From assembly GCA_963924565.1 (NCBI GenBank), contig OZ004608.1, positions 10,044,001 to 10,108,000 on the forward strand: a stretch of 64,000 nt of DNA, read 5' to 3'. The position numbers and the translations under genes were made by a program. Of the stretch, positions 23,601 through 44,600 are shown piece by piece; positions within the stretch are counted from its first letter, which is position 1, and each line of letters starts with the position of its first letter. Below the pieces are notes generated by a model. The model saw only the letters and a program-made list of their open reading frames with translations. It searched no databases and was not told the DNA's origin. The DNA is from Ascidiella aspersa (taxonomy: Eukaryota).

Positions 23601-26600
23601 ATAACCATTAATGAAACTGTTGAGATCAAAGTGGAAACGACCAACATCAAAGTCGAGGAGCTGTATAAGCCTAAAACCATTAAGCCTGGACTATCCTACA
23701 CAGCCTATGTAAGTGTCATTGCCTTATTCTTGGAGTTAAAAAGTTAGCCGCTTGATTTTATTGCTCAATAAAAATTGTTATTTTGTGTTTCAGATAAAAG
23801 TTGTAGAGCAAGATGGAAAACCACTTATGGAAGCCGACCGACTCAGTCACCATCTGGTTGTTGATCTTACATACAAGTAAGTCCTGACAATTAAAATTGC
23901 TTGATGTTAGACATAAGTTACTCAGAGGTCAGCATGCTACAGCCCAAGGGCATAATTTGCCCGAAAATTGAGATTATCCTGTTTTGTGTAACATTTTGCA
24001 CTGGGCCATGAAAGCGCGATATATTTTTGCCTATTTAAAGCAAAGGCAAAAAATAAATTTTTTCACCTACATAAAAATCCTTTACTTTTAAATTAGATTT
24101 ACCGAACTTTTCTATTCCTGTTGTGGAAACCCAAAAAAACGTCAACCACTAACTATTGTTTGTTTATAGTTATCCACGAGGCCATCGTTTTCCTGAAGAC
24201 CCTGGCACCCCTAGTCCCTGGTACCGACCATCTCGAACCGAGAAAAAAACATTCCCAATCCCCCCAGATGGCACGGTGGTTGTTAAGATTGAAGCTAAAC
24301 CTGATAACTTTACCAGCGTCAATTTCCAGGTAGGTTGCTGAATTGTTGATGTTTGAAAAGAGCATTGTTTTTTTAGACTTTAGGAAAGATATTTGTGATG
24401 CTTTGTGTTCTAAAATCCTTATTTTATCCTGGTTTAACAAGCTGCAGCTAATCTACAGTAGGCGAACTGATTTCCGTGAACCTTTCCAAAGAAACCTGTT
24501 GTTTTATTGTAACGTTATTTTAGCATTTCTAGTGTTTCATCGAAACTAAACATATGAACTATTTTATTTCCTGTTGCATTGTCAAAACCCCTGATAACAA
24601 TTAATCAATTTACAAGTGATTTTTTTTTTGTTTTCAGGCATACGTAAATGGTTCTGACAGTTGGCGAGGCATCAGTTTCAAGGTGGACAAAGCCCAGTCA
24701 CCTTCGAATTCCTACCTTCAACTGACCACAGACGACAGCAACGTGGCGCCTGGCGGCAAGGCCAGTATTACTATCAGGACAACAGAAGCTGTATCGAGCT
24801 TCAGAATTATTGTAAGTAATTGCTGGACAAAATTGGAAATGTAAATATCGGATGTTCCTGTAGGGATAAAAGTTTTGCCTAATGCCTAGTGCTCGGCTTC
24901 TATAGCATTTACAACTTGTTTGCTGATTTATTTGCTTCAATTTATTTTTATTGGGTTGAGTCTAATTTAACACGCTAAAGCCTTCACTACGGCATTAGTA
25001 AATGTAAGATTAGAATTAAAATTAGAGCATTGGGTTTTTCAAATTAAGATTAGAATTAGTTTAAATCATTTTAGTTTTTGTCAAATAAAATTAGAATTAG
25101 AATTGAGTTTTAACTGAAATTTCAACTAAAATTACATTAAATTTTTAATGCGTTTTAGCATAGCCTATGCTTTTTAGAATGTAAAAATCACCAACAAGTA
25201 GTTCCGACCACCCAAATCGTGTTTTTTTGCCTTCGCTAGATTCTCGCTCGCGGTCAAATCATGAGCGACCTGGGCTACATGGCTGCGGCGCCGATGCACG
25301 TTCACAACTACAGTTTTCCCATCACCGCTGATATGATTCCAGCTGTACAGGTGCTGGTTTCTTACGTGCGCGGCGACGGCGAAATCGTTGCCGATTTCCT
25401 CAAGCTTACAGTCAGCACCGTGCTCCGCAACAAGGTGGGTGGATTGCACATTGTTGTAGTTGTTCTTGGCGCATTGTGACGTGACAAACGGCTTGTTTCG
25501 TAAAATGCGTTAGAGCCCGTTTGAGTTAAACGAACACCCGTTGAAGGGCATACGATGCAACTTTTAAAGCGTGTTCTATTCTAGTCTGTTGTCTGTCAAA
25601 TTGTCTTGTTGTGAAGTAGTAAGCAAAACTGCGTCGATAGTAGCATAAGGAATTTGTCGCAATTATACAGAAAAAGAACACTAAATCGGTGGCATTGATC
25701 TGTTGACAACCCTAAATTAAATTAAATTAAAGTGAACTGAACCCGGTTAAGTTTTCCCGTTTTTTTTTGCCGTTTTGGTAAATAGAAAACAAAATTTCGC
25801 TTAACAATTTGTTAAACGCTGAAAAATTTGCCCGCCGTGTTTTGCCTTTTCCCGAGTCCAGAAACGCGTTGTTTTCACTGCTTGATAGAAGGCTGCAAAA
25901 CGCAAAGCGTAGAAACCCGAAAAGTTCAAGTAAAGTTGAAGTGTTTCCGTATCGGGCGCCCACGCAAACAAAAAAACCCGAATCCTTCTCTCAACTTCGC
26001 TTTCTCCCTCTCACTTTAGGTTAGCGTGTCCAGCTCGGCCACGAACGTCGACGCAGGTGATGACGTCAACATCCGAGTGCAGACGTCATCGGCAGGAGCG
26101 TACGTGGGCATGCGCGCGATCGACCAGAGCGTTCTGCTGCTCAAGTCCGGAAACGATATTTCGCAGGAGAGGGTGAGTCGACTTGCTAGTTAGGGGTGCT
26201 GTGCCTTGCGCTAGCTGTACCTTGAAAAACCTCTAGTTTTGTGGTTTTCGAACTGTTTTGTCATAGAACCATTTTGAAAATTATCGAGCCTAAGGACCCC
26301 TGATTTTTTAGGATTTACCCTGACTAACAATTATGCAACACTAGGACTAAGTTTTCATGTAAATAGTATCAAACTATCTTTGCAATATTTTAGTCAAAAT
26401 TGAAATGATTTTGCTTAAAAATCTGATTTTTTCTTGTTTAATGATTGTTGGCACCTACATTATTATCCAATAGGGCTCGGCCAGGTGACAAGGGTTCGAA
26501 AACCACTGTCCTATAGCGGTTGCAAAGTCTAGCGCAATTGCAACGCTCGGGGCTATTGTATCAATTTAATCTTTATTGGTATACTTGTTTATCGCCCCGT

Positions 26601-29600
26601 GCCGTGCGCATACTCGAGTTGCTGTTGTTCGTAAGTTATTGTAAAACCAACGAGCAATACCCGACGGGCAGTTTTACCTTGTTAATTGTTTTAAAAACCC
26701 TTTTTGTATTGAACTCTCGAATTTAATGCATTTTGTCTTTACATAGTTCCACCTGGTCCCTCTATTTAGCATTAGACAAATACGGCCATTCGCAAAGATT
26801 GTTTTGTGAAAACTATACTGTTTAGGGGTTTGGCTTGTATTTGTTGCTTGAGCTATGACGTTAGGAACATGAAAAAGTGTTTTTCTACTCGGGTATACCC
26901 CAGTTTAAAATCCTCTTACGTCGTTATTTTAAAGCGGTCATAAGGTTACACCTTTAACAAAGGACAGCGCGAATACGAGCTTTCACTTCCTCGTCTTAAA
27001 AACCCATGCACTGCTAAGGTTATGACCCCCATTTAGCTGCTTATCTGTTCTCTCGGCCAGATTACCTCATGAATTTATGACGTAAATCCGACAAGACATT
27101 TTTGAGTCGCAACAAAACGTATCTTATGTCTACTTTCCTGAGGTGAAATTGAAGAATGGCTACAATAAGGTTAACCCATGCAAATTTATGAAAAATAAAT
27201 TTGGTGTGTTTGTATATGTATCTTTTAAAACTATAAAAGGGTAGTTCTTTACGTGTGAAATACCTATTGTAATGAAATTGTCCATTTTTTTACCAGTTTG
27301 CATGGCGCTATAAAAGAAACCCATGCCCAGTGGTTGTAAAATTATACAAAAAAATTAATCCATACCGTTTTTAGCTTATAACATGGCCTCGCTCAAACGG
27401 CAACGCAAAACGCTGTTATATGCGCAAAAAATGCAAAAACGCTGCCGTTAAACGCTCGCCATTCAACAACACCACCGCTTTGTAGATCGTCAACGACTTG
27501 AACGGATACTCGAACGCCGACGGCTACTCGTCCAGCGATATCTTCTGGCGCTGGTGGTGGTGGTATCCTATTCCGTCCGGCGGTAAAGACGCCTCCGACG
27601 TTTTCTCGGTGAGTGTTGCGCCGTTTCCATTATTGGGTCGTGTTGTGCAGACCTTTTGTTTTAATTTTCGCCTACTGGAGTATCTGCCAAAGGTTACGGG
27701 TCTTTTATTTTGAAAATACGTTCCTTAAAAAATGTCACATTGTGGCAGATAAACACTGCACACACCACTTGTATTGTACCTCCACACTAAACGTTTTTGT
27801 CCAGCGGTCTCGACATTTTAAAATTCATAGTAGTTTATGCATGCTAGCACAACTCGCTTAACATGCGATTTAAAAGAGGGCGATGCGATCTTAGGATCTT
27901 CTTGGCTTGCCCTTAATTATTGCCTTTTTCTTTAAAAGCTGTAGGGTAATTGACAAAAGTTTTTTGTTTAACTAAAAATACATTGGTAATTTGAGTTTCC
28001 AGAACTATTGGAAGTAATAAATATAAGCAACAGTCCTTTGAGAGAAGTTACCTAGTTCTGACGTTAAACGTATCATTAAAATACAATTACCGTGCTGTTT
28101 GATAAAATAGATTGTGCATAACATAACATTTCCACGAATTGTAGCAAACGTGTTCACGTTTTTCAAACATATGTAATGTGTTTACAGAATAGAGCATACA
28201 AATGCGTTATGTAATCAAACAGTTCTAACTCTGTGTGTGTCTGATAAGCTCGGGGTTAGAACCAAGCAAACAGCAAGTGGTTAGATATGCACTGCCACAC
28301 CTGTGAGGCGTGTCGCAGCTCTATCTTTACAGTAATCGCACGATTATGAGTAAAACGTGCTCATGCCGAGATACAGTCAAGACACCCGCAAGCAATATAC
28401 GTGCTTTTAAATCGCTATTTACCAGCAATCCAGCATGTCTATTTCCTTGAGCTGTCGAGCTAACTCTCTCGCAAAATATCGTTCAAGATTTTTCACCGCG
28501 TCAGCGTATATTACGTTTATTAGATTGTACATCCATACTTCCAGTTATTAAAAAAATTGACCTTTGATTTTCTTTGAATTTTCACAGAAAGCCGGAGTCC
28601 TCGTTTTAACCGACGCCTTGCTGTTTAAGAGCGAACCAGAGTGTAAGTAACCTTTGGGTGTTTTTTTTTTAGTTGCTTTATCTTTAGACCGCATTGCTGT
28701 ACAGATGACCGTTAAAACCGGGCAATTTATAGGTTTTTGTCCGCTATGTTGTTACATATTTAAACAGGGGTTGCATATTTGTTTGCTGTTAAATGTAATT
28801 CTGGCGCGCTGTAAGTTTGCTGTCAAGTTTTGAACACCACGTTGCAAACAACAAATGAATTTTATATATTACTTTTGTTGACGAGAAAAAAAACCTTAAC
28901 CGCCGAGCCGTCAACCTTACAGATCTCGGGCCAGTGTTTTTTCAATTGGAGTCTAACGCCCTTGGCGGCGGCGAACAACCGTTCCTTTCTAGGCTAGCGG
29001 TCGCTGGCCCTCCGGCTGGGGCGTCTGGTGCCAGCCCGCCGGCCCCCCAACCCAGGACCCTTTTCCCCGAGACCTGGCTCTGGGACAGCGACATCACTGG
29101 GTAAATTGGCGGCGGTTGTTTCCCGTGGTGGCACGATCGTTTATGTACCGGGGTCAGTGCGGGTCACTGCCGTTTGTGGTGACTACGCGGTAAATCGATC
29201 TTTTATGAATGCAAGGTTGGCATGACGTGTGTGTATATATTTGTGTGCGAGTTGGACCCGGTGGTATCTTGGGTAAGACAAATGGAAAAAGACGACAGAT
29301 TGGGGCCAAAACCCCGCTCGTTCACGTTCCCGATCGCCAGCTGTGTGAACTGCCTTGCAGATTTCGGATACCCGTATTACCAGAATCGCCTCCTCGGTGG
29401 TGTCCCAGTCGCCTTCGCTATCAACCCTGGCAGGAGCATCGGGCCTCAGCCCGCGGCGCTTTCCCGTAAACAAGCCAGTCCAAGTGCGCCCAAGCCGCGT
29501 ACCCTCTTCCCTGAAACGTGGCTCTGGGCCGACCGAATCACGGGGTAACTAAATTGTCCGTCCACTACGAGACGGTGTTCGCTTCCTCATTGGGTTGCGC

Positions 29601-32600
29601 CTGGGTTGTTTAACCCCTTGCTTTGTCGGTCTCCGCTGTTTGATGCTACTTAACCGGTGTGTCATTTCGCTTTGTGGAAGAACCCAAGCGGCCCCTAAAT
29701 CCTCTCCCATCGCGGAAAACAAAATAAAAACAAACGAAAAACTAAGCCCGGATTCGCTTCTCGGACCTAATCCTTTAGCGAATTACAGTATCAACGCTTT
29801 CAATGGATTACTGGTCAATTTAACGTCACCTGTGGCTCTTTGTAGACTTGCGTTGGCCCTTCGCATTCTTCCAATCCCAACGAGGTCCGGCTTTTCCAAA
29901 TGTCCAGCGTATCGTTGGCGGCCGCCGCGTTCAAAGCAGCCCCGCGCCAAAACCAAGGAGCCTTTTCCCGGAGACGTGGCTATGGGCCGACCGAATAACC
30001 GGGTAATTTACATCGGTCCTGCGCTTTAAACCAATGCGCTTCGACTGCGAGTTGCGGTGGCAGGACGCGAAACTCCATTATCGAGTTTTAAGGGCTTTTT
30101 GGGTGCTTTAGCCGCTTTTTTAACGGGGATGTGTCGATTTGTATAGACCCCGATTACTATGTCAATTACCTGTTGGCCGATATCGACGATAGGAGCCCAA
30201 TCGTTCAACGCGGTCCAAGCGCCGGTCGCATCATGAGCGGTTCCGCCTCTAATGGAAGCCCCGCCCCAAAACCCAGGACCCTGTTCCCGGAGACGTGGCT
30301 TTGGGCCGACCGAGTAACCGGGTAATTTTAACGCCCCTTGCCCCGATTTCTTCGCTTTGGCTGCGCGGTTACGGTGGGTCGACGGCGAATCGCCATCGAG
30401 ACTTGGGGAAAATGTGTGTTATGTTTCGATTATACTGCGGGGTAGTTTAGTTCTATAGTGTGTTGAAGCTTGGTTCACATACGCCTGGCGTTAAATGCTA
30501 ACGTCATTCTCAATTTACGCGCATAACACGTCGGCTGCGTTAACGGCAAATTTTCTCCCGAAGGTAAACTTGAAGTACCGACGTTTTTCGTTTAACGCAC
30601 AACGCGTCTAGCGTGAAACAACCATTACAATTCAAGTAGCATAGTGAGCCGATCGGCATTTTGAGGTATAAGTTGGAAGTTGGTATAAGTTAGGTTTCGG
30701 TTTGCTTTTGTAGATTTCCCGATCCGCTATGCGTTCGGCGGCGGTGTTCAAGCCTTTGCCGTCGACAGCCAAATAGTGGCCAGACAGCCCGAAGCGTTGC
30801 GGGGCCCTGCCCCGGCCGCTCCGGCCAATAGCAACCCCACGCCACGGACCCATTTCCCCGAGACCTGGCTGTGGGACAGCGGTCTTACTGGGTAACTTTG
30901 CTGGCTACTCTATGGGTGTGCTTAGAAAACTGCTTCAAATGCTGTTTTTTTTCTCGCAACGGACTCGCATGTGACCTGGAGGTGTTAACAACGCTATATC
31001 CGCTTTTTCTTGTATATTTAGTAACCAAACATGGGCCCCTTGAATCCTTACTGTTACGAGGTTTGCCCTTTTGTCACTATTTGCCAAGTTTGTCCAATAG
31101 GCGTTTCCATCCTAATATTTTTGGCCCTTTGCGCGAAAATCAAGAATTTGAAATGTACAAACATCGGTTATTGTCGAAAAGACAAACAGATAATCAAAAG
31201 AAAATTCTTTGTCTGTTTTCGTTTTTAACCTGTCTGGTCTTTTTCGTCAATTGCGCTCAAATTTTCGTTAAACAGTCGCGTCAGAAAAGCGGCAAACAGC
31301 GTAGCGAATGTCAGGCCTAGATTTTTAAAGTCGTTATTTTCGACCCGAAACACGCAGACGGGGATTATTACGGAGGCGGAGACTATTTGTTCGAGATACA
31401 GTTTGACGGCGGCGATATGGAGGCTCCAGTAATAATGGCGGACTCTGATGGGGAGAACGTTGAAAGCGAGCTACCGCAAGCTAAAAAAATCCGCTCGTTT
31501 TTTCCGGAAACGTGGCTATGGACGGAGGGCAGGACAGGGTGAGATAAGACTGGGGACAGGTTAAGGGGGTTTATTTATACTTCAGTTGCAGTTATATTTT
31601 TTTTATTTTGGATATGCATTTTCAGTTTTACAGATTATTTTTTTAGCGAGCCATTTTTAGCGAGCTCGTGTTGGTCGTCTTAGGTTTTAAGCCTAAAGTG
31701 GTTCTATTTTTTAAGACTCTTAATTGTTTTGTTTTTAGAAGCCCCTTTTGATAGTTCAACTTTGTGAGCTTAACCTGATCTATATCCCTCGCCGGTTTCG
31801 TGAGCCCAGTTCTATCAGTATAAAGTTTTAAGCCAAATCATTTCCACTTTTGGATAAAACTGTACCAAGAGATGAGGCGTTGTGTGTAGTTTTACCCACA
31901 AGAGAGTTGCAATATTGTGGAAGTCCTTTATGGTGAGCAAGTTACGGGGATCTTAAAAAAAGTGAAAAACAAAAAACTTCACGCACATAACAAGTACCAA
32001 GGTTTGGAGAAAAGTCTTAATTTTATGAATACACGCCAGGACTGCCAGTCAGCACACTGCGAGGACCGAATTTGAATATGCCCCAAATCGAATCGCAGCA
32101 GGCAGCAATATATCGCTCTCAGCTGTAGCGCTCTAGGTTGGTGAACGAAAGCGGCAGAATCGAGAGGATTGGCCGGTAGTGATCGTAGCGAAATTACCAA
32201 TTCGCAAACGTTAGAATTCGAATGGTGTGGTGCCAGCGCCAAGGCGACCAATTGTCAGGAAAGAAAATTGACTGAATCACCGCCTTTCGATTCCATGGCC
32301 ACCAACTTGACGTGAAGGCTGCGCTCGGCTGAACGTGTAAAAGGCACACCCATATGTATTTTAACGCTATTGAAATGAGCTTGCCTGTCAAATTCGCGTT
32401 AACAGAATATGGCCTTGTTCAAACTAGCGAGTTACTTCCGCCTACGTTCACGTGAAATGCTTTACAACCCGCGATAAATTATTACCTTTTGCAATACGTT
32501 GGTGGTGGTGCAATGACTGGCGTTTTCTCCATATTACGTTGTATAAACCCGGTTTATTTCGGGGAATGCACAGATACGGTTCAATTATATTTGCGTTTAC

Positions 32601-35600
32601 GAATGAATAACAATAAAATTAACTGATCGAATTACCAAACGTATATGAATTTAAGGTACCACCTAAAATGTTCTAGTTAAAAGTTCACTTAATGGCCATT
32701 TCAAAATGAGATAAAAATAAATACTACAAATTAGGCGATCAAATGACATAATTTTAATGTTCACCAGAATGGTCGCTTCTTAAAGCAGCTTCGAAAAAAA
32801 ACAACCTTTAATTGACCAAACGACATACCCAACGCAAACGCAACTCAGTAAGCAAGTTTTAAGTCGGCCTTCATTCAATCCAGTTCCGGTGATGCTGTTC
32901 AAAGGCAGCGTAGCAGCAGCTGGCCCCAACAGGGAAGCGGCCGTAGCGGTTACTGACGATACCGTACACGAGGCGCCTAACCCTAGGTCCTACTTTCCGG
33001 AAACTTGGCTATGGAGCGGCGCTATTGCCGGGTATGGCGCCCCCGGAACGATTGCACTGTTGTTGCATGATGCCGAGTTTCGGCGTTAAAGCGATTTTTT
33101 TTTAAGCTGAGGCTTTCGTTGGTTGCCGATTTATGAAGAAGTTTTGTTTTGATATTTTCAGCTGTTTTCCTTGTTTCTTGTGCTGTTTGTATTTTGTTCA
33201 GGACGTACGCTTTTGCACGGATCCCAAATTTTATCCCAAATGGTCATAACTTAAAAGAATGGATTTCGCTTACCTCTGATAACTCGACTTTCGTTTATTT
33301 TAGTTAACCTTCGAAAATCAGCCTTTTCCACAACGGTATAACACTAAAACTTCCTAAAAACACACAACCAACACCGCGAGAGAAAACTAGAGGAAGGCAA
33401 AACTTGCTATATCTCCCGCTAATACGCAACGCAACGTTGTAAGCGAAACTCAGTCGTTTGCAATTGACTGAACTTTGCTTTGCCCCTCGCGCAGATGTAG
33501 ACATCTACCCGGTTTTCGCCATGGCCGAGTCGGCCAATTTTGACTTGGACGACGGCAATAACGCCCTGAAACGCGGCCAGGCGTCCGGCGGCGCCCAGGC
33601 CCCCGCGCCCCGCACCTATTTCCCCGAGACCTGGCTGTGGGACCACTCGCTTACCGGGTATATAACAAAAATAACATTAAAATCACGCCCTCACAATGGT
33701 GTAGCGGCTGCTGTGCATGACTTGCCGGTTCTGTGCGTTACTTTTGTGCATTATATACGTTTTTATTTGACGGTGGGAATGTTAACGCTATACTATACGT
33801 ATAACTGTTAATTTGCACGTGGTGTCAGAGATGGCGTGCGTTTTTACTGTTTTTATATGTTTTTTCGAATTTTGTGCAGTGTTGCAACTGTGGCACCCAC
33901 GCTGTGAGCACTGTTTTTTTTGTAAAAATTTGTACCACAAAAAAATAAAAAAAAAATACATTTTTACTTGAAAAAAAATTAGTGAAATGCGATTGTAGAA
34001 TTAATATTTTACATTCACAAAGCCTTAAAATAAGCATATATAACCCAAATAAATCGAAATTTTGAAGTAAATGCCCCGCAACAAACAACTAGCTTGTTTG
34101 ACGGCCAATTGCAACAAACAACTAGCTTGTTTTGACGGCCAAAATATTGCCACGGCAGATGCCTACCCCTTCGTTTACGACTCGTCGGAGAGATTGGGTG
34201 ATTTTTTTGACGCCCTGTTCCCTTCCATGACCGTCTCCTCGGCCCCAGCAATAACCCCGAGAACCCACTTCCCTGAAACCTGGCTCTGGGAAAACGACCT
34301 GACCGGGTATGTCCCCCCCCACCCCCCACACACACACTATCGCCCGTTGAACGTTCTGCACGAAATCACCCCCGTATTGCGTCGCCATTCAAATATTCGA
34401 CGTCGAAATTGTGTAGTAGTCGGTCGAACATTTTCACGAGTTAAAACGAGCATGCCACTTCTACCAAATCACACATGTTCTTCGTCGTTGCACACTTTTG
34501 CGCCCAACCGTTTGTTTTGTAAAGATTGTTTATGCTGATCGGTTGAACAGAATGCCTTTGTCCATTCCTCTTGCAAAAAGGGTAACAAAATCGATCGTTT
34601 TAGGTCTTATAAACCAACAGAATCGCGCACTCAGAATATACCCAATATTTTGAACTTTTTCAGCAGGATTTAGTATACCTAGAAGTCTTCTTGTCTAATC
34701 TAACCTAGCCCTGATGTGTCCTCACCTCCTGAGTTTAACCCTAAAGCCTTACAACAGGGGCAGTGACGTTTAACCTTTTTTCTCCGTGTGTCAGTTGACG
34801 ACTACCCGGTTTACTTTATGATGGAAGCCGCGGAGGCCGAGTTCGACTCTGACGTAACAATGGTGGGCAATTCCGCTGGCGGGGCGGCGCCCACACCGAG
34901 AACCTACTTTCCCGAAACCTGGCTTTGGGACGAAGGCTTTGCCGGGTAAAAAGCGAAACTGCCTGTAGCGCGAATGCGGAACGAGTAATCAGTAGTCTTG
35001 TTTCTTACTAGCGACAAGTCCTCTTCCCTTTACGTCGCTAATTTATTTTCATTCCAAATCGAAATCCGCTAATATTCGTTAGCTCTGCAAACACGGCTTT
35101 CCAATCGAGCATTTTAACGATTCACCCAATGCTAATTATAGTTTTCCGGACATTTTATTAGAGTATTTTTCAATATTAGAGTATTTTTCAATATTAGAGT
35201 ATTTTTTTTTCAAGTTTCCAATGATTTCCTCGCATGCGCAAGCGTTACTTCTGCGATTTTTCATATAGAACAACCCAAATTTTGCACGATTTAATTTCTT
35301 GTGCACGTTGTAATTTGCGGTAAAACGTTTTTTTGCAGCTCTTTCATGATTATTTTGGAGAGGTTACCTTTTAGGTTTAGGTTGTGGGAAAAAAATTATC
35401 ACAAAATAATGCATTCTCTGCGGATTAAGGCAAAGGTTCTTGAAACTGTGACGACCTGGTGCGTCGTTTTAATTTCCTAAACGGATGAGTGTGAACAAGG
35501 CCAATCATTAAAATATATATACGATTTATCTGCAAAGTCAAACAAAATGTGGCGCCACCGACGACAGGCCGGGAATTGTATATAGCTTAGCTTAAAATAA

Positions 35601-38600
35601 ATCCAACCGATGTCTGTCTTATCTCTCGTATGGTTTAAAAATTCCACGATGACGCAAGTGAAGCCGACCGCTTCTCTGCACGCCTTGCACCAACGCTTGG
35701 TAATGGCTCGAAGCGATCGCGATCCACAGGCAATCGCGATTTGCGGCTTGACAAGACCACCTTCTCTTTTTAGACCGCTTTGCCATTGAGCCTGGCTTTT
35801 TTCAAATTCAGTCGGCCCGTTGAAGATACCGCCTGCAAAAGATGCTTCTTTGGAAAAGAGGGTGGCCAAAGAAAGCGGCTGCTGTTGAAATAGTCATAGG
35901 TTACTGTATTTTTGAAATGGACAATACGCAAAAAGCAAGGTAAAAATGGGATTCTCCTCTTTGTTGTCATTGCTCAGTTCAGTACCTTTTTAAAAACATG
36001 TGCACTTGCGAACTTCCAATGAAAAAAAAGTGAGACCTGACCTTTCGAAGCAAACAGGCCTTGAAAGCGTCATCAGATCGCTACGTTTTCGTGGAAAATC
36101 CCCGATTCCCCATGTCGAGCAAAACAAATCTGTCGCGCGTTTCGTAACTCTCCAATATTTTTCTTCGATTTTTGCCTTCGGAGAAGACTGACGAAATTTC
36201 TTTTCCTGGAAAAGCCCAAGTATTCAGTTTTAAAGCGTTTGCTGTTTTGTTTACCTATACGACTGTATTCAATCCCAGGGCTCTTTTCGCCTTTCGCCCG
36301 TTCTCGGATGATGTTGGGAGCCGCTCCGGGCATTTCAGGCAGATTCCAGGCCCCTGCTGAACCCCGGTCGCATTTTCCCGAGACCTGGCTGTGGCAGGAC
36401 GGGTTGACCGGGTAAAGCAAAAATCTAACTGTAGATTTTGCAGATTAACGCTTGGAGGGACAAAAAATATCGAGCACGTGCAGAAGTATGTAGCATTTTG
36501 TGAATGATTGACGAAACGTTTTGCAAACCGTTCACAAAATGCGAGCAATACTTCTATTATGTGCTTCGACATTCCTTCTAGGAATAACATAGCATCCTCG
36601 CTCTTATGTATGTAGACGCAAAGTAAGTAGATCATTTAGCAGTCACACATAGTTAACGCTCATGCTTCAATACAACCGCAACTGAAATCCCTTTAACGCC
36701 CCCCCCCCCCAAAAAAAAAAAAGAAAACCACCACGAACTTTCCTTAAAGAGAGGTCTGATGCTTCTGATTGCAGTCGAAAACGTGGTCCTCTATTCGATG
36801 TCGCGGAACTTCGGATTGGCGCAAGACGCCCAACTCGACTTTGTAGGTCCAATCGTGGGCGCTTCGCCAATCGGTAACGCCGCACCACCCAAACCGAGGT
36901 CCCACTTTCCCGAGGCATGGCTCTGGGACAGCTCTCTTACAGGGTAATCCCCGGCATTTCCAATCCAATCAAGAACTCGCGCACCGCATGACGTCATACT
37001 CCTGACCCCCACCGCCTATAGTCACTGTGGAGGACTAACTTACATCATCGTCTTTTGCATTGCAATGCGGCTCTGGCGACGTGTCCTGACGCAATTTACA
37101 AACGAGTTGGCCAAGGTCGTGAGTTCGAATCTCACCGCAGAAAAGGCGTTTGCAAATCTAAATTCCTAACATGCAATTGCTACGAAATGTCTTGAGTCCT
37201 TGAGTCTTGCCACAGAAACAGTCATTTTTTTAATTTTAAAATTTGAATATTAAATATCGGTTTAAGCAATTGCTACGAAATGTCCAAGGTCGTGAGCTCG
37301 AATCCCACTGCAGACCAGTCGTTCGTAACTCTAAATATCGGTTTAAGCGATAGCTACAAAATGTCTCAGGTCGTGGGTTTAAATCTCACCTCTTAGCATA
37401 GTTATTTGCAATAGGTAACCTGAATGTCCTTGGTTCGTGAGTTCGAGTTGCAACACCTGCTGATTTATTGTAGACGTAATATTACATAAAGTCGAACCGC
37501 TTCAAATTTAGATTCAAATTGCAGACGAACGATATGGGCGGCCGAGATATGGGCTGCCGAGATATGGGTCCAGTGGCCGTGTGGGTATGGCGTTTCCGAT
37601 GGCAAACAGCCGCATACAATATAAGGCGCTCGCGCCTCAATCGTTGGACATCGGCGGCTTTTATCCCACTCCGGCTAAACCCAAACCGAGGTCCCACTTT
37701 CCCGAGGCATGGCTCTGGGACAGCTCGCTTACAGGGTAATCCCCCGGCATTTCCAATCCATTCAAGAACTCGCGCACCGCATGACGTCATACTCCTGACC
37801 CCCACCTCCTATAGTCACTGTGGAGGACTAACTTACATCATCGTCTTTTGCATTGCAATGCGGCTCTGGCGACGTGTCCCGACGCAATTTACAAACGAGT
37901 TGGCCAAGGTCGTGAGTTCGAATCTCACCGCAGAACAGTCGTTATCTCTAAATTCCTAGCTGGAGAAATTGCTACGACACGTCCGAGTACGAGATTTGAA
38001 ATCTCACTCTAGTTTAGACCAGTCCTTTGTAAATTAAATCCAAATCTCGGTTTAAGACTTCAAGCGATTGATACCAAATGTCCGAGGTCGTAAGTTCAAA
38101 TTTCACTGCAGACCATTCGTTTGTAACTCTAAATCTCAGTTTCAGCGATTGCTACAAAATGTCTGAGGTCGTAAGTTTGAAAAAATTGCGATATTTATTT
38201 GCAGCAGGTAACTCTGTTACACATACCTGTCACTCCGTCATGGCGTTGGTTCGTGAGTTCGAAATGCCACGCCGACGACTGATTTATTGTTCCTTGCTTG
38301 TACGAACTGCGACGAACGGATCTAGGATATAGCTTATAGGCCGCTATAGATGTACTACTATATACAAAGTCGAACCCGCTTCAAATTTCGATTCAAATTG
38401 CAGATAAACGAAAACGATATGGGAGGCCGATGTTTAGGTCCCGTGGCCGTGTGGCCACCAGCCGTATACGGTTTAAGGCTCTCAAGCCGGCGTCGCTGGA
38501 TATTGCCCGTTCTCCCACTCCGGCTAAACAGAAACCGAGAACTCATTTCCCCGAAACTTGGCTGTGGGACGCGTCGCTAACCGGGTAAAAGTCACTATAT

Positions 38601-41600
38601 GTCCTGGACTACATGTCCTGGACTGCCGTTGTTTTCATTCAGTGAAACACCGTCAACCGACTTGTAATGTAATGGCAGTAACCCACTCTAACACGTCACT
38701 CACTCACTCGCTCGTACGAAACAACCTTTTCCATTGTCATTTATTTAACAAACGCGTCGAAAGATTGCAAGGCCTGGGCGCATTAAAAAAAACTGGCACT
38801 GGTGTAGAATCCTACCACAACGTTGAAACATTATTAAACCAACGCAGAATATTCGGGATAGGGTGTCGGATGGGATTTGGGTGAGGGTGGGTCTAGTATT
38901 ATTATAATTATTTAATAGCATTCCTAACTCGAATACAAAACGACTTGCTAACTAGTTTCTGCTGTAGTTGTTGGAGAGTTTAAAGAGGCCCTTCAGTCCC
39001 TCAAAATACTTTTCAAATCACTTCGCAGTTCGAGTAATTAAACCTACAGACAGCTGACGAGCATAAAGACCAGCTTGAACTTTGATTACACGTGCGGAGA
39101 GCCCGAGGGTGGGAATGTTTGCTGCAAGAAAGCAAACAAGCGGCATATCAAGTATCAAACCCGCATTTCAATCAACCAAAATGACGCGTTGGGCAGATAT
39201 AAAGCAGGGGTGGGCAATTATTTTTTGAGAGCGGGCCTCATAAGAAACAGACAATGTCTTGGCAGGCCGTGTCAAAAAAGTGGACCTCGAATACATATAT
39301 AACGTACGATTCCTTTTAAAAGAAACTATAAATATCGTTGTCTAGACAAGCTTGTAAGAGTAGGAAAAGGTGCAGATGCTTTACAAGAGTAATGTATTCA
39401 ATAAAAATTCCGGAATCAAAAGAAAAAACATGTAAGGTTTACTTTTGCCTAAAAAAGGTATATTGTGGATAAGCCGCGGTTCAGATTATATTGCTTGGCT
39501 GGCCGACGTTTTGCCAGGTCTGAGCTAAAGGGTCTACGTATTAAATACCATTCATATTTGAACGTCTTCAGGACCTTTAATTATAGGTTCGAATTTAACG
39601 CCGTTGCGTTTCGAAGGTCGAAACAAAATTGTAAACTATTATTTTAAACCACGGCTAAATCGTTCAAACCGACGAACAGCTACCACTGCGTATCGATGCC
39701 ATTTCAATACTGTGCAGGTTTTATCATTTATTTTTTAATATTTTACTTTTTTTCACGTGCATGCTGCATGCTTACCTCGTCGCATGAAACTCTTTTGTTC
39801 ACTTTTTCCGCAATCGCCTTCGGGCTGTTTTTGTTCATAATAGATTATTATAAGCTTAGGTAAATAAATATTTTTTGTATAATAAATATTTTTTGTATGT
39901 AGTTGAGATTAAATGTAGTGTATGTGCTTACAACCAAGGTAGGATTTTGGAGATAAAGTAAGATTCTATATAAGATAGCATATGTCACGTCTCGTTTTTA
40001 TGCCTGCTTTCCAATGTTATTTGCCCAATTGCATTCCCTTGAAATATTTTTAAAACGTTTACTTTTCTTTAAATGCTATGCTTTGTAAATCCGCCCGTAT
40101 GTGACATGCGATTTAACTAAAACACTTAAAGGGATTAACTAAGCAGGCATAAAGACGGACAGTCAAACTTAAGAGTCACGTCGTGAACTTGTAAAATTGA
40201 CTTTGCTTTTTGCCCGATTTAGCGCCGACGGTGCAGCGACCTTCGACACAAAGGCGCCCGACACTATTACGTCGTGGATCCTGAGCGCCTTCTCAGTATC
40301 GGACGAGTACGGGTTTGGACTCGCCGACACTTTCAAGGTGAGTAGTCGAGTAATCGAGTAGGTGAGTAATGGTAAGTTATTTACAACTTGGAATAGTTGC
40401 TGTTCATTTAACTTGGAATCAAAAACATACTTTATTAGCCTCAATCATTTTTCGCGGTGACCTAAATACTAAACGTAAGTATAACAGTCATGCTTTGGCG
40501 ACCAAATTCACTTCCCTAAACTAAATGACTTAAAACACAAATAAATTATAGTGCTAATTAGTTTAAATTCAATGAATATAAATCATGTTTCGTATTGTTT
40601 CTGCGGTTTTATAATAAGTTCTTTACAACTTGGAAAATGTGATGATTATTTCGAGACAAAATTTATTTCCTTGAAATCACACAAAAAAGTTTCTAATAAA
40701 GACTGGCAGACGTTTCTCGAACTTTCTTCACCCGCCGCAAATTGCCTTTAATCCGCCAAGGTGTGTTGCCAAAAATTTCATCGCCCTCTTATTTCTTTCT
40801 TGAAAAACCGCAAGCGTTAAAACCTCGTATGCGCTGATAAAATTTAAAACCTCGGGCGCTCATTCAATTAGCCGCTGTTTATATCAAGAAAGGTTGGAAA
40901 GCTTCAAGCGTATGCCAAGGGGAACTACGTTACGGCGTCATCGGGAGCTTTTGTCGTGTTACACGCTGATTTATTTTCCCAACGCGTATTTGCCGCCGAT
41001 TCACCTCGCAGTAAACATGTTGTGGTGTGGCGTCGATTTATCATCGCGTACACAAAAGGTTGCCGGCGCGTGTTTTTCTCAATTGTATGCCTTTTGCGTC
41101 AAAAGTGCCCTTTAAAGCCACTTGAAAGACGTGCGAGATGAGCCTAGGCCTTTCTTGCCGCCGTTGTTGGAATTTGCTTAAAGTCCAGTAACAAAGGGGT
41201 CGCTTTGGTTTTTAAAGCAGCCAAAATTCTCCTTGTTCCTGGTGTGGGTCATACGGAAAGTTGTTTTTGATTTTAATAACTAATCCTAAAACACGCGTTG
41301 ATTACGACACGTAAAGTAGTTGCCACACCTGAGCTTCAAATTGGAGAAACCTTCGGTAGAGTTCCAAGTTAAAGTTATATTTTCAATTTTTAAAAACAAG
41401 ATCACTGTGTCTAGCGTTTTAAAAAATGCGCTAAAAGTCCTTTTGTTTCTTTGCAGAGTTGAACGTTTTTTATTATATTTTAGACTTTACGAAACCGAAT
41501 TGATTGGTCGGGCTTTAAAACACAAGCTGGTTTGAAAGTCGGCTTTGGCCGATTCACCAAAACAAAGACACCGAACTCATTTGTTCTTCCTTGCAGATCA

Positions 41601-44600
41601 CCGTCTTCCGTGAGTTCTTCGTGAGTCTCAACCTTCCACTTCGCATCACGAGGGGTGAAGCGATCATCGTGCAAGCGACCGTCTTCAATTACTTCGACAC
41701 ACCGCAAACAGTGAGTCGTTCGTTGTTTTTCTGGTTTGTTAACCCGGCTTTTTAGGAGCCGCTGTACGCTATGCTTGGTCTCTAAGACAAAACAGAGAAA
41801 TAGCGCATTGGGTAATGGCGAAGGTATGCGAGAAATATCGCTACCCTTTATAAGTATCTGTGCTAAAGAAATTAATGCTATAAAAATAACCACAATGTTA
41901 CCCAACATGGTCGAATATGTCTTTAAGTAAATTAGATCAAAATACATTGATACGACCTATAATGTATCTAGCACATCTGGTCGACAACCAATTTCACTTT
42001 AATCAATTAGATTTAAACGCTTGATAACAGGTTCGTGCTCTTAGCCGAAAACCACTAAAACAATAACAACCCCCTACCAAGCTTAAAAACAAAAATTCAT
42101 ATATAGGTAAAGCATTAAGTGTTTTTTGTTGGGACACTTCGGCTTCAGACGCCTTACAAAAGGTCCAAGACCTTTTGTACAAGTGGATCGAATGACCACA
42201 CCTGGACACTTAGAAAAGAAAAAAACCTCTCAAAGAAAGTTGAAGTGCACTCGGCTTGTGACGCTCCATGGCACATGGTTGCCAAAAAACGCGGGTGCAG
42301 GCGAGCGGAAACACTTCGAAAGCCATATGCAATTAATTGCAGCAACTGACATGTTGCTGTACTAGCAATCCCACACTACTAGTTTCGTGTGGAGTCGTTG
42401 ACGTGCTCACAGCAAAGGTCTCGGTTGAAACTGATGTATTTCTTTGCCTTGTCGACCGAATCTGTATTCCGAAACGCAGTGTGATTATATTTGATTAATC
42501 TGATTCGAAATCACCACTACCACTATATATATACACAGTTTTTCAGTCCCGGTACTTTAGTCGTACAACAGAAACGAAACCTCATAGCCGAATAACCAGC
42601 CATCTAACGATTTTTCATATTGTTATTCTTTTTGTTAATTCTGCCTAGTACGCAAAGTAATCCATTTACCTCGCCTCGTCCGCCAAAAACGAGCGCACCC
42701 GCTGCCTATGTCCTTAAGTTTTACTTATTCTACATGTAGCATAGGCCTTTCATACATTTTTACGTTCTAACTATTGAATCTGGAATTAGAAGCATACAAA
42801 ATGTCGTCCCCTTTCAATGGTCAAACCAACCCTTAAAATATTCTATTCGGCCTTATGTTAATCAAAGCACTTTAATCAATTCGTAACAACACAAAAAAAC
42901 TTCTGGCGGCTTTTGACCCCTCGCCCCTGACCCGACCACTTTCTCTTCACCCAGGTCCAGCTGACCCTGAGCCAGAGCGCCAACTTCGAGTTGATCACCC
43001 CCGGGAATGACCCGATCGCCGCCGGCCCCATGCGCACCCTCTATGTACCCAGCAACGGCGCCGTGTCCGTCAAGTTCCCGGTACGCATGAACAGCCTCGG
43101 GGAAGTCCCGATCACGCTGTCGGCCGTTGCCGAGCTGGGCCAGGACGCCCTTACCAGGGTCGTATACGTCAGGGTAAGGATTCGATATTTATGCTTCGGA
43201 ATATTTTTTTATATATTTTTTTTCTTTTTGGTGTGTAGTTCGTTCTTCAATTTACTTCGATCCAGCATACCTCTCTCCTACTGACAAATTTTAAGTGGTT
43301 ACTTGTGAAATTTATCGTTAACATTACCAGGGTCTTGTACGTCAGGGTAAGGATCTAATGTTTGTGCTTCGTTATATTTTTTTTATTTTTATTACTTTTG
43401 GTGCGAGGTTCGTGCTTTCCCCTTTTCTATCCGGCACAACTGTCCTCAATTGTTGAATTTTTACTGTTTACTGGTAAAATTTGCCGTTAAAGTTTCTAAA
43501 GTCGTGCTTAATAAGTCGAATATCTAAAACTCTCATCGAAAGCTTTTTTTCAATAGCTTGTCTGCATTTCTGCGTTTTCTGTTTTAATTTCTTTAGCGTC
43601 TTGTTTCCTTAAAACTATACTTTGAATTAAACCTTTACCTAAACTGTCTTGTGTATAGTAGTTAAAGTGACTATAAGCGTTTAGTAATTTAGTTAGTATT
43701 AGACCAGGGGTTAAACTTTTATAGCGGTGTATTTATGGCGCACCAATTAAAATCTTGCTGGGCTGAAGAGTCGAGTCCAGTCCCCATAACAGTATAACAC
43801 GAATCAAACTTAACCTCAACTTTCTTATTTTGTGCCGTTCACAACACCTTCCTTAAACGTCCTTTGTATACACAGCCGGAGGGCATCCAGCAGTGCTATT
43901 CCTCCTCGATCCTTGTAAACCGCGAGAGCGACCGAGATCCGACCAGCACCGAAGCCCTTGAGATCCTGATTCCAGTTGGAATCGTGCCCGGGTCCGAAAA
44001 GGTCAAGCTATCTGTTTACGGTAAGCCTTCGCGACCCGGCATCGGTGTTCAAGATTTTTTTTATGAGAAGGGTCGGTTTTTAGGGTTTGGCTTTTGTTTC
44101 CACTTGGGATTTTTGTTTACGCTTTCTACATAGATTTAAAGATTGGCTTTTGTTTCCGTTGAGCAATTTTAAAAGATCTCGGTTATTAAATCGCTCCCCT
44201 CAAAACTTCTTTAAAACACAGACCTGTTTTATAGGTTTATATTTGTGCAAGTTTTGTGTTTTGATTATTACATATTTAAAATATTGTTTCGACTGATACA
44301 CTGGTAGCGTCTCCATTAAACTTCCATCACCAACAAATAGTCCCAAAATACGGAGTTCCCAAAGTCAAAACTACAGAAGACGCCCAAACGATCTAAAGCA
44401 GCGCTTTATTTTTATCCTTTTCAATTTTTTCACATTACATTTTTTAATTTTCAATTCTATCTTCAGGCGACATACTGGGAAACACGTTAAGCAACTTGGG
44501 CAACCTGCTTCGTATGCCTGGCGGTTGCGGCGAACAAAACATGCTCGGGTTTGCTCCCGACGTCTTCGTCACCGACTACCTGAAGAAGGCGGGCAGACTG

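What the first reader, a model, noticed from the sequence alone, without database searches (positions are those of the whole stretch)
28588..40337. Dscam-like library of 14 mutually exclusive bait-region exons in a thioester protease-trap/opsonin gene
Seen: between constitutive exons 28588-28642 (ends in phase 1 with a T) and 40223-40337 (starts in phase 2, then ADG...PDTITSW) lie 14 intact paralogous exons. All are 3n+1 nt (133-211 nt) with AG/GT ends. The variable 5' parts are mostly unalignable, while every 3' part encodes R-x-x-F-P-E-[TA]-W-L-W-x4-[TA]-G. The split first codon always gives Y, F or W and never a stop. Skipping all cassettes or joining two shifts the frame, so exactly one fits. 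Established: the segment just before FPETW is the A2M/TEP bait region, whose cleavage triggers the conformational change and exposes the thioester. Bait splicing has precedent in a few invertebrate TEPs (e.g. Drosophila Tep2, a handful of variants). Inference: one gene produces 14 differently triggered thioester traps, an unusually large innate-immune diversification system that standard annotation would collapse to one exon.
Basis: partly seen in the sequence, partly recalled or inferred. Interest (0 to 1): 0.95.

Follow-up and report, generated by a model that had tools for sequence, protein, structure and literature searches.

The report
Fourteen alternative bait exons in macroglobulin
A sea-squirt-type thioester immune protein gene carries 14 interchangeable copies of the exon that encodes its protease "bait". 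The array is real, but this way of diversifying the protein is already known in snails, insects and other sea squirts, and whether all 14 copies are used here is still untested.

Summary
Fourteen intact paralogous exons lie between 28923 and 38584 on the + strand. Each ends in R-x-x-F-P-E-[T/A]-W-L-W-x4-[T/A]-G with a GG|GT donor. Each has an in-phase [C/T]AG acceptor and a length of 3n+1 (133-211 nt).

The motif occurs 14 times in the 308.6 Mb genome, and all 14 are here. The gene (about 21.6-58.9 kb) is the ortholog of the ascidian "alpha-2-macroglobulin homologue" (51-57% identity to Phallusia, Ciona and Clavelina). It has the thioester GCGEQ, the catalytic His and a Laminin_G_3 tail.

One cassette keeps the frame. 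None or two cassettes give a premature stop. Every copy is under purifying selection in the conserved tail (pS 0.78 against pN 0.10), while the bait parts are unalignable.

The claim of exceptional novelty does not hold:
- Biomphalaria BgTEP2 has 12 such exons (PMC7016707).
- RefSeq isoforms show the same cassette swap in Styela (7), Clavelina (4+4), Ciona (3), a mosquito (11) and abalone (10 or more).

RNA evidence here is thin. There were 58 reads, and no cassette junction reached the reporting threshold. No Dscam-like docking site was found.

Verdict: a new, large member of a known kind. This scan noted the same stretch before (s1-801862).

The parts
21590..58907 (+). Whole gene: ascidian-type alpha-2-macroglobulin homologue (TEP/CD109-like) with about 30 constitutive exons. 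The ends are approximate.
   Evidence: Collinear tblastn with Phallusia CAB3229046 (P0180, 1810 aa), Ciona, Clavelina and Styela proteins. Pfam hits: MG2, A2M_BRD, A2M, TED, A2M_recep and Laminin_G_3.
27486..27608 (+). Constitutive exon before the cluster (..[21 protein letters not shown]). The donor at 27608 is confirmed and the acceptor is inferred.
   Evidence: Eight RNA reads that begin at 28588 carry a loose 5' part identical to 27578-27607. 63% identity to Phallusia residues 616-653.
28588..28642 (+). Upstream constitutive exon ([18 protein letters not shown] plus T). It ends in phase 1.
   Evidence: Sequence. The acceptor is confirmed by 8 split reads. Homologous to ..LTDALVY.. in the ascidian orthologs.
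28923..29100 (+). Bait cassette 1 (178 nt, starts with Y)
29361..29544 (+). Bait cassette 2 (184 nt, Y; basic, net charge +5)
29846..30002 (+). Bait cassette 3 (157 nt, Y). It contains VQRIVGG at 29902-29922.
   Evidence: The 7-mer is shared with a Styela cassette.
30147..30321 (+). Bait cassette 4 (175 nt, Y)
30714..30891 (+). Bait cassette 5 (178 nt, Y). It is heterozygous in DNA run X1.
31358..31538 (+). Bait cassette 6 (181 nt, Y; acidic, net charge -9; GTGAGA donor)
32884..33031 (+). Bait cassette 7 (148 nt, F). An alternative in-phase acceptor lies at 32857.
33495..33657 (+). Bait cassette 8 (163 nt, Y)
34159..34306 (+). Bait cassette 9 (148 nt, Y)
34795..34945 (+). Bait cassette 10 (151 nt, F; acidic, net charge -7)
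36279..36411 (+). Bait cassette 11 (133 nt, W). An alternative in-phase acceptor lies at 36228.
36775..36943 (+). Bait cassette 12 (169 nt, F; FPEAW variant)
37525..37735 (+). Bait cassette 13 (211 nt, Y; FPEAW variant). Its 3' half and downstream intron are 93.7% identical to those of cassette 12.
38404..38584 (+). Bait cassette 14 (181 nt, Y; very basic, net charge +14)
40223..40337 (+). Downstream constitutive exon. Its first base completes the Gly codon, followed by [18 protein letters not shown]... This is the start of the Pfam A2M domain.
   Evidence: Sequence. PF00207 positions 7-51. Aligns to human CD109 residues 730-759 of 8s3o_A.
44448..44663 (+). Open frame holding the thioester exon (..[10 protein letters not shown]..)
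   Evidence: TED_complement, E 2.7e-16. Best PDB match is human CD109.
45356..45604 (+). TED exon with the catalytic His (..GKVSHRAMQ)
   Evidence: The His aligns with the His of TEP1, CD109 and A2ML1.

Best explanation
This is the bait-region exon of an ascidian-type alpha-2-macroglobulin homologue, a thioester protein close to CD109 and the insect-type TEPs. The exon has been amplified into a tandem array of 14 alternatives.

Each mRNA is expected to carry exactly one cassette. The upstream exon ends in phase 1, every cassette is 3n+1 nt long, and the downstream exon supplies the last base of a Gly codon. Skipping the array or including two cassettes therefore shifts the frame into an early stop, and such products would be lost (NMD is inferred).

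Each cassette encodes two things. The first is a different 28-54 residue exposed bait, with net charge from -9 to +14. The second is an invariant tail, P-R-[ST]-x-FPE[TA]WLW, which begins the next folded domain.

By analogy with A2M and CD109, a protease that cuts the bait triggers the conformational change. This exposes the thioester, which is His-assisted here and then bonds covalently to the protease or a nearby surface. The array would therefore give one gene a germline repertoire of differently triggered traps or opsonins.

Shown: the anatomy, the frame logic, the selection on every copy, and the same cassette swap in annotated isoforms of orthologs. Inferred: use of all 14 cassettes, their protease specificities, and how a single cassette is chosen.
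For: - 14 intact cassettes with identical donor offset and in-phase acceptors. The motif is unique to this array in the genome. There are no decayed copies.
- All cassettes hit the same residues of homologous proteins, between collinear flanking exons.
- Single inclusion is open for all 14. Skipping gives a stop at 40282. 89 of 91 double inclusions hit a stop by the end of the next exon.
- In the conserved tail pS is 0.78 against pN 0.10, and the invariant Arg is written with 5 different codons. The variable parts have a median identity of 23%.
- Domain set, thioester and catalytic His are present.
- RefSeq isoforms of orthologs differ only in this segment: Styela X2-X8 share a 686-aa prefix and a 1080-aa suffix with 7 cassettes that start with F, Y or W, Clavelina has 4+4, and Ciona has 3.
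- The same architecture is published for BgTEP2 with 12 exons.
- Bait cleavage followed by thioester exposure is established for CD109 and A2M (PMC9352918).
- RNA reads show + strand transcription across the array and confirm the 27608 to 28588 junction.
Against: - No read-level proof of any junction from 28642 into a cassette or from a cassette into 40223. The single RNA run gave 58 reads on 28331-34330, with intron depth similar to cassette depth, and no joint reached the 3-read threshold.
- No docking/selector RNA pairing above the control was found, so the means of choosing one cassette is unknown.
- Several acceptors have in-phase alternatives.
- That the isoform models in relatives rest on transcripts is my knowledge of how RefSeq isoform models are built. 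It was not checked here.
Confidence: 0.8

Rival explanations
1. Only one or a few cassettes are functional. The rest are duplicated exons that the spliceosome ignores, so the real repertoire is much smaller than 14.
For: No cassette junction was seen in the RNA run. None of cassettes 1-9 shows depth above the intron background. Relatives have only 3-8 annotated variants per gene.
Against: All 14 copies keep an open frame, both splice sites and the invariant tail, although synonymous sites are nearly saturated (pS 0.78, pN 0.10). No decayed copy exists. Unused exons would not be kept like this. Annotated counts in relatives are lower bounds.
Confidence: 0.12
2. Cassette choice is enforced by Dscam-type competing RNA structures, with one docking site in a flanking intron pairing with a selector next to each cassette.
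For: The layout (a tandem array between two constitutive exons) is the one in which such structures are known. Tandem duplication tends to create them (PMC6071210, title and abstract only).
Against: A scan of both flanking introns (28643-28922 and 38585-40222) against all inter-cassette introns, using 14-nt windows with G:U allowed and at most 1 non-pair, gave no site hitting more introns than a reversed-sequence control. The maxima were 6 against 9 and 7 against 7. The top hits were T-rich or G-rich low-complexity runs. The test is crude and has no cross-species conservation to lean on.
Confidence: 0.1
3. The cassettes are spliced in series as a repeated segment, or the array is an assembly artefact.
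For: None beyond the tandem layout.
Against: Any two cassettes in series shift the frame. Homologs have one copy of the segment. The cassettes are highly divergent. Contigs of DNA run X1 cover 28331-34326 collinearly.
Confidence: 0.02

Closest known systems
Biomphalaria glabrata BgTEP2 (12 mutually exclusive bait-region exons over 30 kb; Duval et al. 2020, PMC7016707)
   Same: A tandem array of alternative exons at the highly variable or bait position of a TEP. The exons vary in length and sequence but have a strongly conserved C-terminal part. One exon is used per transcript.
   Different: It is a mollusc gene of the insect-TEP group and its transcripts are documented. Here there are 14 exons over 9.7 kb, in an ascidian A2M homologue with a Laminin_G_3 tail, and usage is not yet shown.
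Ascidian orthologs: Styela clava CD109 antigen-like isoforms X2-X8 (XP_077965464-71), Clavelina lepadiformis (two genes, 4 isoforms each), Ciona intestinalis alpha-2-macroglobulin homologue X1-X3 (NP_001027688 / Q8T398)
   Same: Same gene family and same exon boundaries (..LTDAL..[SK].P[ED] | aromatic..R..FPE[TS]W.W.... | .DGS..). The isoforms differ only by this segment. One Styela cassette shares VQRIVGG with cassette 3.
   Different: There are fewer annotated variants (3-8 per gene). Their genomic arrays could not be read here. I found no paper describing them.
Drosophila Tep2, Chlamys farreri CfTEP, and RefSeq models of Malaya genurostris TEP1-like (X1-X11) and Haliotis CD109-like (isoforms up to X14)
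   Same: Alternative bait exons that include the R-x-x-FPE[ST]W tail: 5, 6, 11 and 10 or more variants respectively.
   Different: These are protostome genes. The counts for the mosquito and abalone come from automatic annotation, not from a study.
Human CD109 / A2M / A2ML1 (solved structures 8S3O, 9FX3, 7Q1Y)
   Same: Domain order, thioester, His and bait region just N-terminal of FPETW. Bait cleavage triggers thioester exposure.
   Different: They have a single bait exon. CD109 is GPI-anchored and A2M is a tetramer. This protein has a TSP1-like and Laminin_G_3 tail.
Dscam1 exon 4/6/9 clusters
   Same: Arrays of mutually exclusive exons in a gene linked to immunity.
   Different: Dscam has several clusters, up to 48 variants per cluster, and docking/selector RNA pairing. 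Here there is one cluster, and no such pairing was detected.

Membership tests
A2M / TEP (thioester-containing protein) superfamily | Macroglobulin domain series with bait-region domain, A2M domain, TED and receptor-binding domain, in order | tested here: met
   Exon by exon, Pfam finds MG2, A2M_BRD, A2M, TED_complement (two exons), and A2M_recep (23.2 bits against a cut-off of 21.7). The exons are collinear with full-length homologs.
A2M / TEP (thioester-containing protein) superfamily | Thioester motif GCGEQ | tested here: met
   ..[10 protein letters not shown].. lies in the open frame 44448-44663. TED hit E 2.7e-16.
A2M / TEP (thioester-containing protein) superfamily | Thioester actually formed and exposed on bait cleavage | not testable with these tools
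   Needs the protein: methylamine or protease treatment, then autolytic fragmentation or covalent-complex assays.
C3 / TEP1 / CD109-type reactive thioester | Catalytic His about 100 residues after the thioester | tested here: met
   The H of ..GKVSHRAMQ aligns with the His of TEP1 (4lnv), CD109 (8s3o) and A2ML1 (7q1y).
Ascidian alpha-2-macroglobulin homologue orthogroup (Ciona Q8T398 type) | Collinear similarity over the whole length, higher than to other TEP groups | tested here: met
   Identity of 51-57% over about 1380-1640 aligned residues to Phallusia, Ciona and Clavelina, against 37-41% to other Styela CD109-like genes and less to non-tunicates.
Ascidian alpha-2-macroglobulin homologue orthogroup (Ciona Q8T398 type) | C-terminal extension with a Laminin_G_3 domain | tested here: met
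   PF13385 scores 34.4 bits (cut-off 27.6) in 57837-58202. A TSP1-like match lies below the cut-off in 54825-55169. The orthologs carry PF13385.
Vertebrate-type CD109 | GPI anchor signal at the C-terminus and a furin site before MG8 | not tested
   The long isoform ends in a Laminin_G_3 tail instead. An alternative GPI-type end was proposed by another first-stage note (s1-801731) and was not examined here. I do not file the gene as CD109 proper.
Mutually exclusive bait-exon arrays of TEPs (BgTEP2 / CfTEP / Tep2 type) | Tandem paralogous exons at the bait position, phase-compatible only singly | tested here: met
Mutually exclusive bait-exon arrays of TEPs (BgTEP2 / CfTEP / Tep2 type) | Transcripts that each carry one of several cassettes | tested here: inconclusive
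   58 RNA reads and no cassette junction at the 3-read threshold. Only orthologs' isoform models show it.
Dscam-type docking/selector controlled clusters | One docking site complementary to a selector beside every variable exon | tested here: not met
   No window in either flanking intron pairs with more inter-cassette introns than a reversed control. The test is crude, so this lowers the idea but does not exclude it.

The most novel reading that the evidence does not exclude
The array may be an old, selectively maintained repertoire of target-specific protease decoys in a chordate lineage. At least one bait (cassette 3, VQRIVGG, the cleavage site of trypsin-type zymogen activation) is conserved between this species and Styela. 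Other baits turn over quickly, and one (cassette 5) differs between the two alleles of one animal by six amino acids. If cassette use is switched by tissue or infection, ascidians would have a protease-sensing diversity system that is the largest of its kind described. Its single-cassette choice would work without Dscam-like RNA pairing.
Probability: 0.3. Interest if true: 0.6.

Novelty: new member of a known kind. Interest (0 to 1): 0.4.

Why it matters
The finding places a bait-exon array in a tunicate, the sister group of vertebrates. I found no published description for tunicates, and 14 is two more than the largest published array (12 in a snail).

It gives a compact 9.7 kb locus for asking three questions:
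- how one exon of many is chosen when no docking structure is evident
- whether bait variants carry distinct protease specificities, with the R-IVGG bait as an obvious first test
- how fast such arrays evolve by unequal crossover and allelic divergence

It does not change the picture of invertebrate immunity. The principle is known, and public annotation of related species already shows it.

Tried and rejected
1. RNA junction test. It placed only 58 RNA reads, all in the sense of a + strand transcript, with no joints and no loose end after 28642. This gives no verdict on cassette use.

2. The run search used a 10 kb stretch. By the tool's own warning this can hide RNA runs that hold only small exons.

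3. Docking/selector search. Whole-intron duplex folding gave meaningless full-length pairings. A windowed complementarity scan showed nothing above the control.

5. Cassette-by-cassette orthology across ascidians. Local alignment of the variable parts gave z of 4.5 or less over 266 comparisons, which is not convincing. The exception is the shared VQRIVGG 7-mer.

6. Cassettes alone against PDB and Pfam gave no significant match, as expected for a bait.

7. A search for proteins of this species in the public collections found nothing. The best identity was 59%, so there is no transcript-derived isoform of this gene.

8. Other A2M-family loci of the genome. In the 10-20 kb read upstream of their A2M exons, L004 has a single FPETWMW, and L002 and L005 each have a single FNENWIW. 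L001 showed no clear motif. None shows an array.

Exons were searched one by one by reference. Exons were concatenated only inside a local script, to count frames and stops, and nothing joined was printed.


Full report
WHAT IS THERE

A six-frame scan of the window finds the peptide FPE[T/A]W 14 times, all on the + strand between 29063 and 38547. Every motif is followed 37 nt later by a GG|GT[A/G] donor at exactly the same offset. Upstream of each lies a [C/T]AG acceptor (11 CAG, 3 TAG) in the phase required by the preceding exon.

With those acceptors the 14 exons are:
- 28923-29100
- 29361-29544
- 29846-30002
- 30147-30321
- 30714-30891
- 31358-31538
- 32884-33031
- 33495-33657
- 34159-34306
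- 34795-34945
- 36279-36411
- 36775-36943
- 37525-37735
- 38404-38584

Their lengths run from 133 to 211 nt and all are 3n+1. The split first codon (T plus two bases) reads Y (10), F (3) or W (1). With a leading T the codon could also have been L, S, C or a stop, so the aromatic start is a conserved feature.

Exon 28588-28642 ends ..SEPE plus a T. Exon 40223-40337 begins with a C and then [18 protein letters not shown].

The degenerate DNA pattern of the motif occurs 14 times in the whole 308.6 Mb assembly, all in this array, with no hit for the control pattern. A looser pattern adds only two unrelated single sites elsewhere. A nucleotide profile of the conserved 3' ends finds just these 14 in the window, so there are no decayed copies.

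THE GENE

Exon-sized open frames on the + strand match Pfam MG2, A2M_BRD, A2M, TED_complement, A2M_recep and Laminin_G_3. The frame 44448-44663 holds the thioester motif GCGEQ. Its best solved relative is human CD109, closely followed by A2M. The His that assists thioester reactivity in C3, TEP1 and CD109 is present (..GKVSHRAMQ).

Full-length homologs fetched from the public collections align collinearly from about 21.6 to 58.9 kb. The closest are the ascidian "alpha-2-macroglobulin homologue" proteins:
- Phallusia mammillata: 56-57% identity over 1380-1640 aligned residues
- Ciona intestinalis Q8T398: 51-54%
- two Clavelina lepadiformis genes: about 52-53%
- the Styela clava gene with isoforms XP_077965464-71: 40%

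From these similarities I infer an ascidian, nearer to Phallusia, Ciona and Clavelina than to Styela.

All 14 cassettes align to one and the same stretch of each homolog, the residues just before and including FPETW. They lie between flanking exons that each occur once. The downstream exon aligns to residues 730-759 of human CD109 (8s3o_A). This places the variable part of the cassettes roughly where CD109 has its unmodelled bait region (Asp649-His689 in the structure paper's numbering, PMC12927315), within the uncertainty of numbering and indels.

FRAME LOGIC

Counting frames locally, single inclusion leaves the frame open through the downstream exon for all 14 cassettes. Skipping the array gives a stop at 40282. 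Of the 91 ordered pairs, 89 meet a stop before the end of the downstream exon, and the other two are out of frame as well. The smallest gap between cassettes is 144 nt, so steric exclusion is unlikely (inference).

I looked for Dscam-type docking and selector sequences. No 14-nt window in either flanking intron pairs with more of the inter-cassette introns than a reversed control does. How one cassette is chosen is therefore open. Loss of wrong products by frame shift and NMD is the only mechanism the sequence itself supports.

ARE ALL COPIES KEPT BY SELECTION?

In the 8-codon block x-FPETWLW, the pairwise synonymous difference is 0.78 and the non-synonymous difference is 0.10. The invariant Arg three residues before the Phe is written with five different codons. 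These copies are old and each has been held to the same protein sequence, which is not what unused exons do.

The bait parts, in contrast, are essentially unalignable. Their median identity is 23%, the only pair above 40% is 13/14, and net charge runs from -9 (cassette 6) to +14 (cassette 14).

The array is still evolving. The 3' half and downstream intron of cassette 13 are 93.7% identical to those of cassette 12, while its 5' side resembles cassette 14 (63.5%). This fits unequal crossover.

RNA

One RNA run of the same species label was available as raw reads (X4). Only about 6% of it was read, and 58 reads were placed on 28331-34330.

Nearly all the depth (all but 0.32 in one bin) has the first mate on the - strand. 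In the usual stranded libraries this means a + strand RNA.

Eight reads that start at 28588 carry a 5' part identical to 27578-27607. This confirms the junction from 27608 to 28588.

No joint and no loose end after 28642 reached the tool's 3-read threshold. Depth on cassettes 1-9 (0-3) is no higher than on the introns between them. So this run shows that the gene is transcribed, but it says nothing firm about cassette use.

COMPARISON WITH WHAT IS KNOWN

- Duval et al. 2020 (PMC7016707) describe 12 mutually exclusive exons over 30 kb in Biomphalaria BgTEP2, variable in length and sequence but with a conserved C-terminal part. That is the same design.
- The same paper cites six mutually exclusive exons in scallop CfTEP, five isoforms of Drosophila Tep2 and six variants of a shrimp A2M.
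- Public annotation goes as far. Eleven RefSeq isoforms of a Malaya genurostris TEP share a 639-aa prefix and a 766-aa suffix and differ only by a 43-85 residue segment ending in R-K-x-FPESW.
- Abalone CD109-like genes have ten or more distinct bait segments, with isoform numbers up to X14.

Most relevant are the ascidian orthologs themselves, which show the swap:
- Styela clava isoforms X2-X8 share 686 N-terminal and 1080 C-terminal residues. They differ by seven cassettes that start with F, Y or W and end in R-[ST]-x-FPE[ST]WIW.
- Each of the two Clavelina genes has four cassettes.
- Ciona has three.

"Standard annotation would collapse it" is therefore not borne out in relatives. I found no paper that describes the ascidian arrays. 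With 14 cassettes, this locus is at the top of the known range rather than outside it.

CONSERVATION OF INDIVIDUAL BAITS

Across species the variable parts are mostly too divergent to pair up. There is one exception. Cassette 3 and the Styela X6 cassette share the 7-mer VQRIVGG. No shuffle out of 200 reaches a shared 7-mer. A Clavelina cassette has NRIVGS. R|IVGG is the activation cleavage site of trypsin-family zymogens (established knowledge). A bait of this kind would be cut by zymogen-activating proteases (inference).

LIMITS

Exons were searched singly by reference.
- The structure of the bait in context was therefore not modelled.

VERDICT

The finding is a real, well-preserved array of 14 alternative bait exons in an ascidian thioester protein. 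Use of all 14 cassettes, and their specificities, remain to be shown. It is a new and large member of a known kind, of moderate interest.

Noticed in passing
window 30779-30812 (cassette 5): DNA run X1 carries two contigs over 30749-30877 at about half depth each. Seven listed differences within 34 nt change six amino acids (AR>TS, EA>PV, AP>TS) and none is silent. The bait of cassette 5 is strongly polymorphic within one sample.
   Followed up: partly
window 29902-29922 (cassette 3): VQRIVGG, the trypsin-type zymogen activation site, is shared as a 7-mer with one Styela clava cassette (isoform X6, XP_077965469). It is echoed by NRIVGS in a Clavelina cassette. 0 of 200 shuffles give a shared 7-mer.
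   Followed up: partly
window 28643-28900: The intron right after the constitutive exon has RNA depth 4-6, close to that of the exon (about 7). Other introns of the array lie near 1, and cassette 1 has none. Read-through stops at once (TAA at 28649-28651). This could be slow removal of the first cluster intron, a truncated transcript, or noise from few reads.
   Followed up: no
window 36775-38584: The 3' half and downstream intron of cassette 13 are 93.7% identical to those of cassette 12 (about 500 bp at 85% overall). Its upstream side resembles cassette 14. This is a recent duplication, probably by unequal crossover.
   Followed up: partly
window 51065-58952: After the A2M receptor-binding domain the gene continues into a TSP1-like exon (54825-55169, below the Pfam cut-off) and a Laminin_G_3 domain (57837-58202, above the cut-off). 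The Ciona, Phallusia and Clavelina orthologs do the same. Styela has shorter isoforms, so an alternative C-terminus is possible.
   Followed up: partly
G000 C3:33290441-33291045 (L004), C3:35824709 (L002), C3:16511268 (L005), C4:9856737 (L001): There are four other A2M-family loci in the genome. L004 has a single FPETWMW. L002 and L005 each have a single FNENWIW and look like recent duplicates of each other. No cassette array was seen in the 10-20 kb read.
   Followed up: partly
window 34307-34330: There is a C-rich and CA-repeat tract right after the donor of cassette 9. It differs between the assembly and the reads. RNA reads run through this donor unspliced.
   Followed up: no
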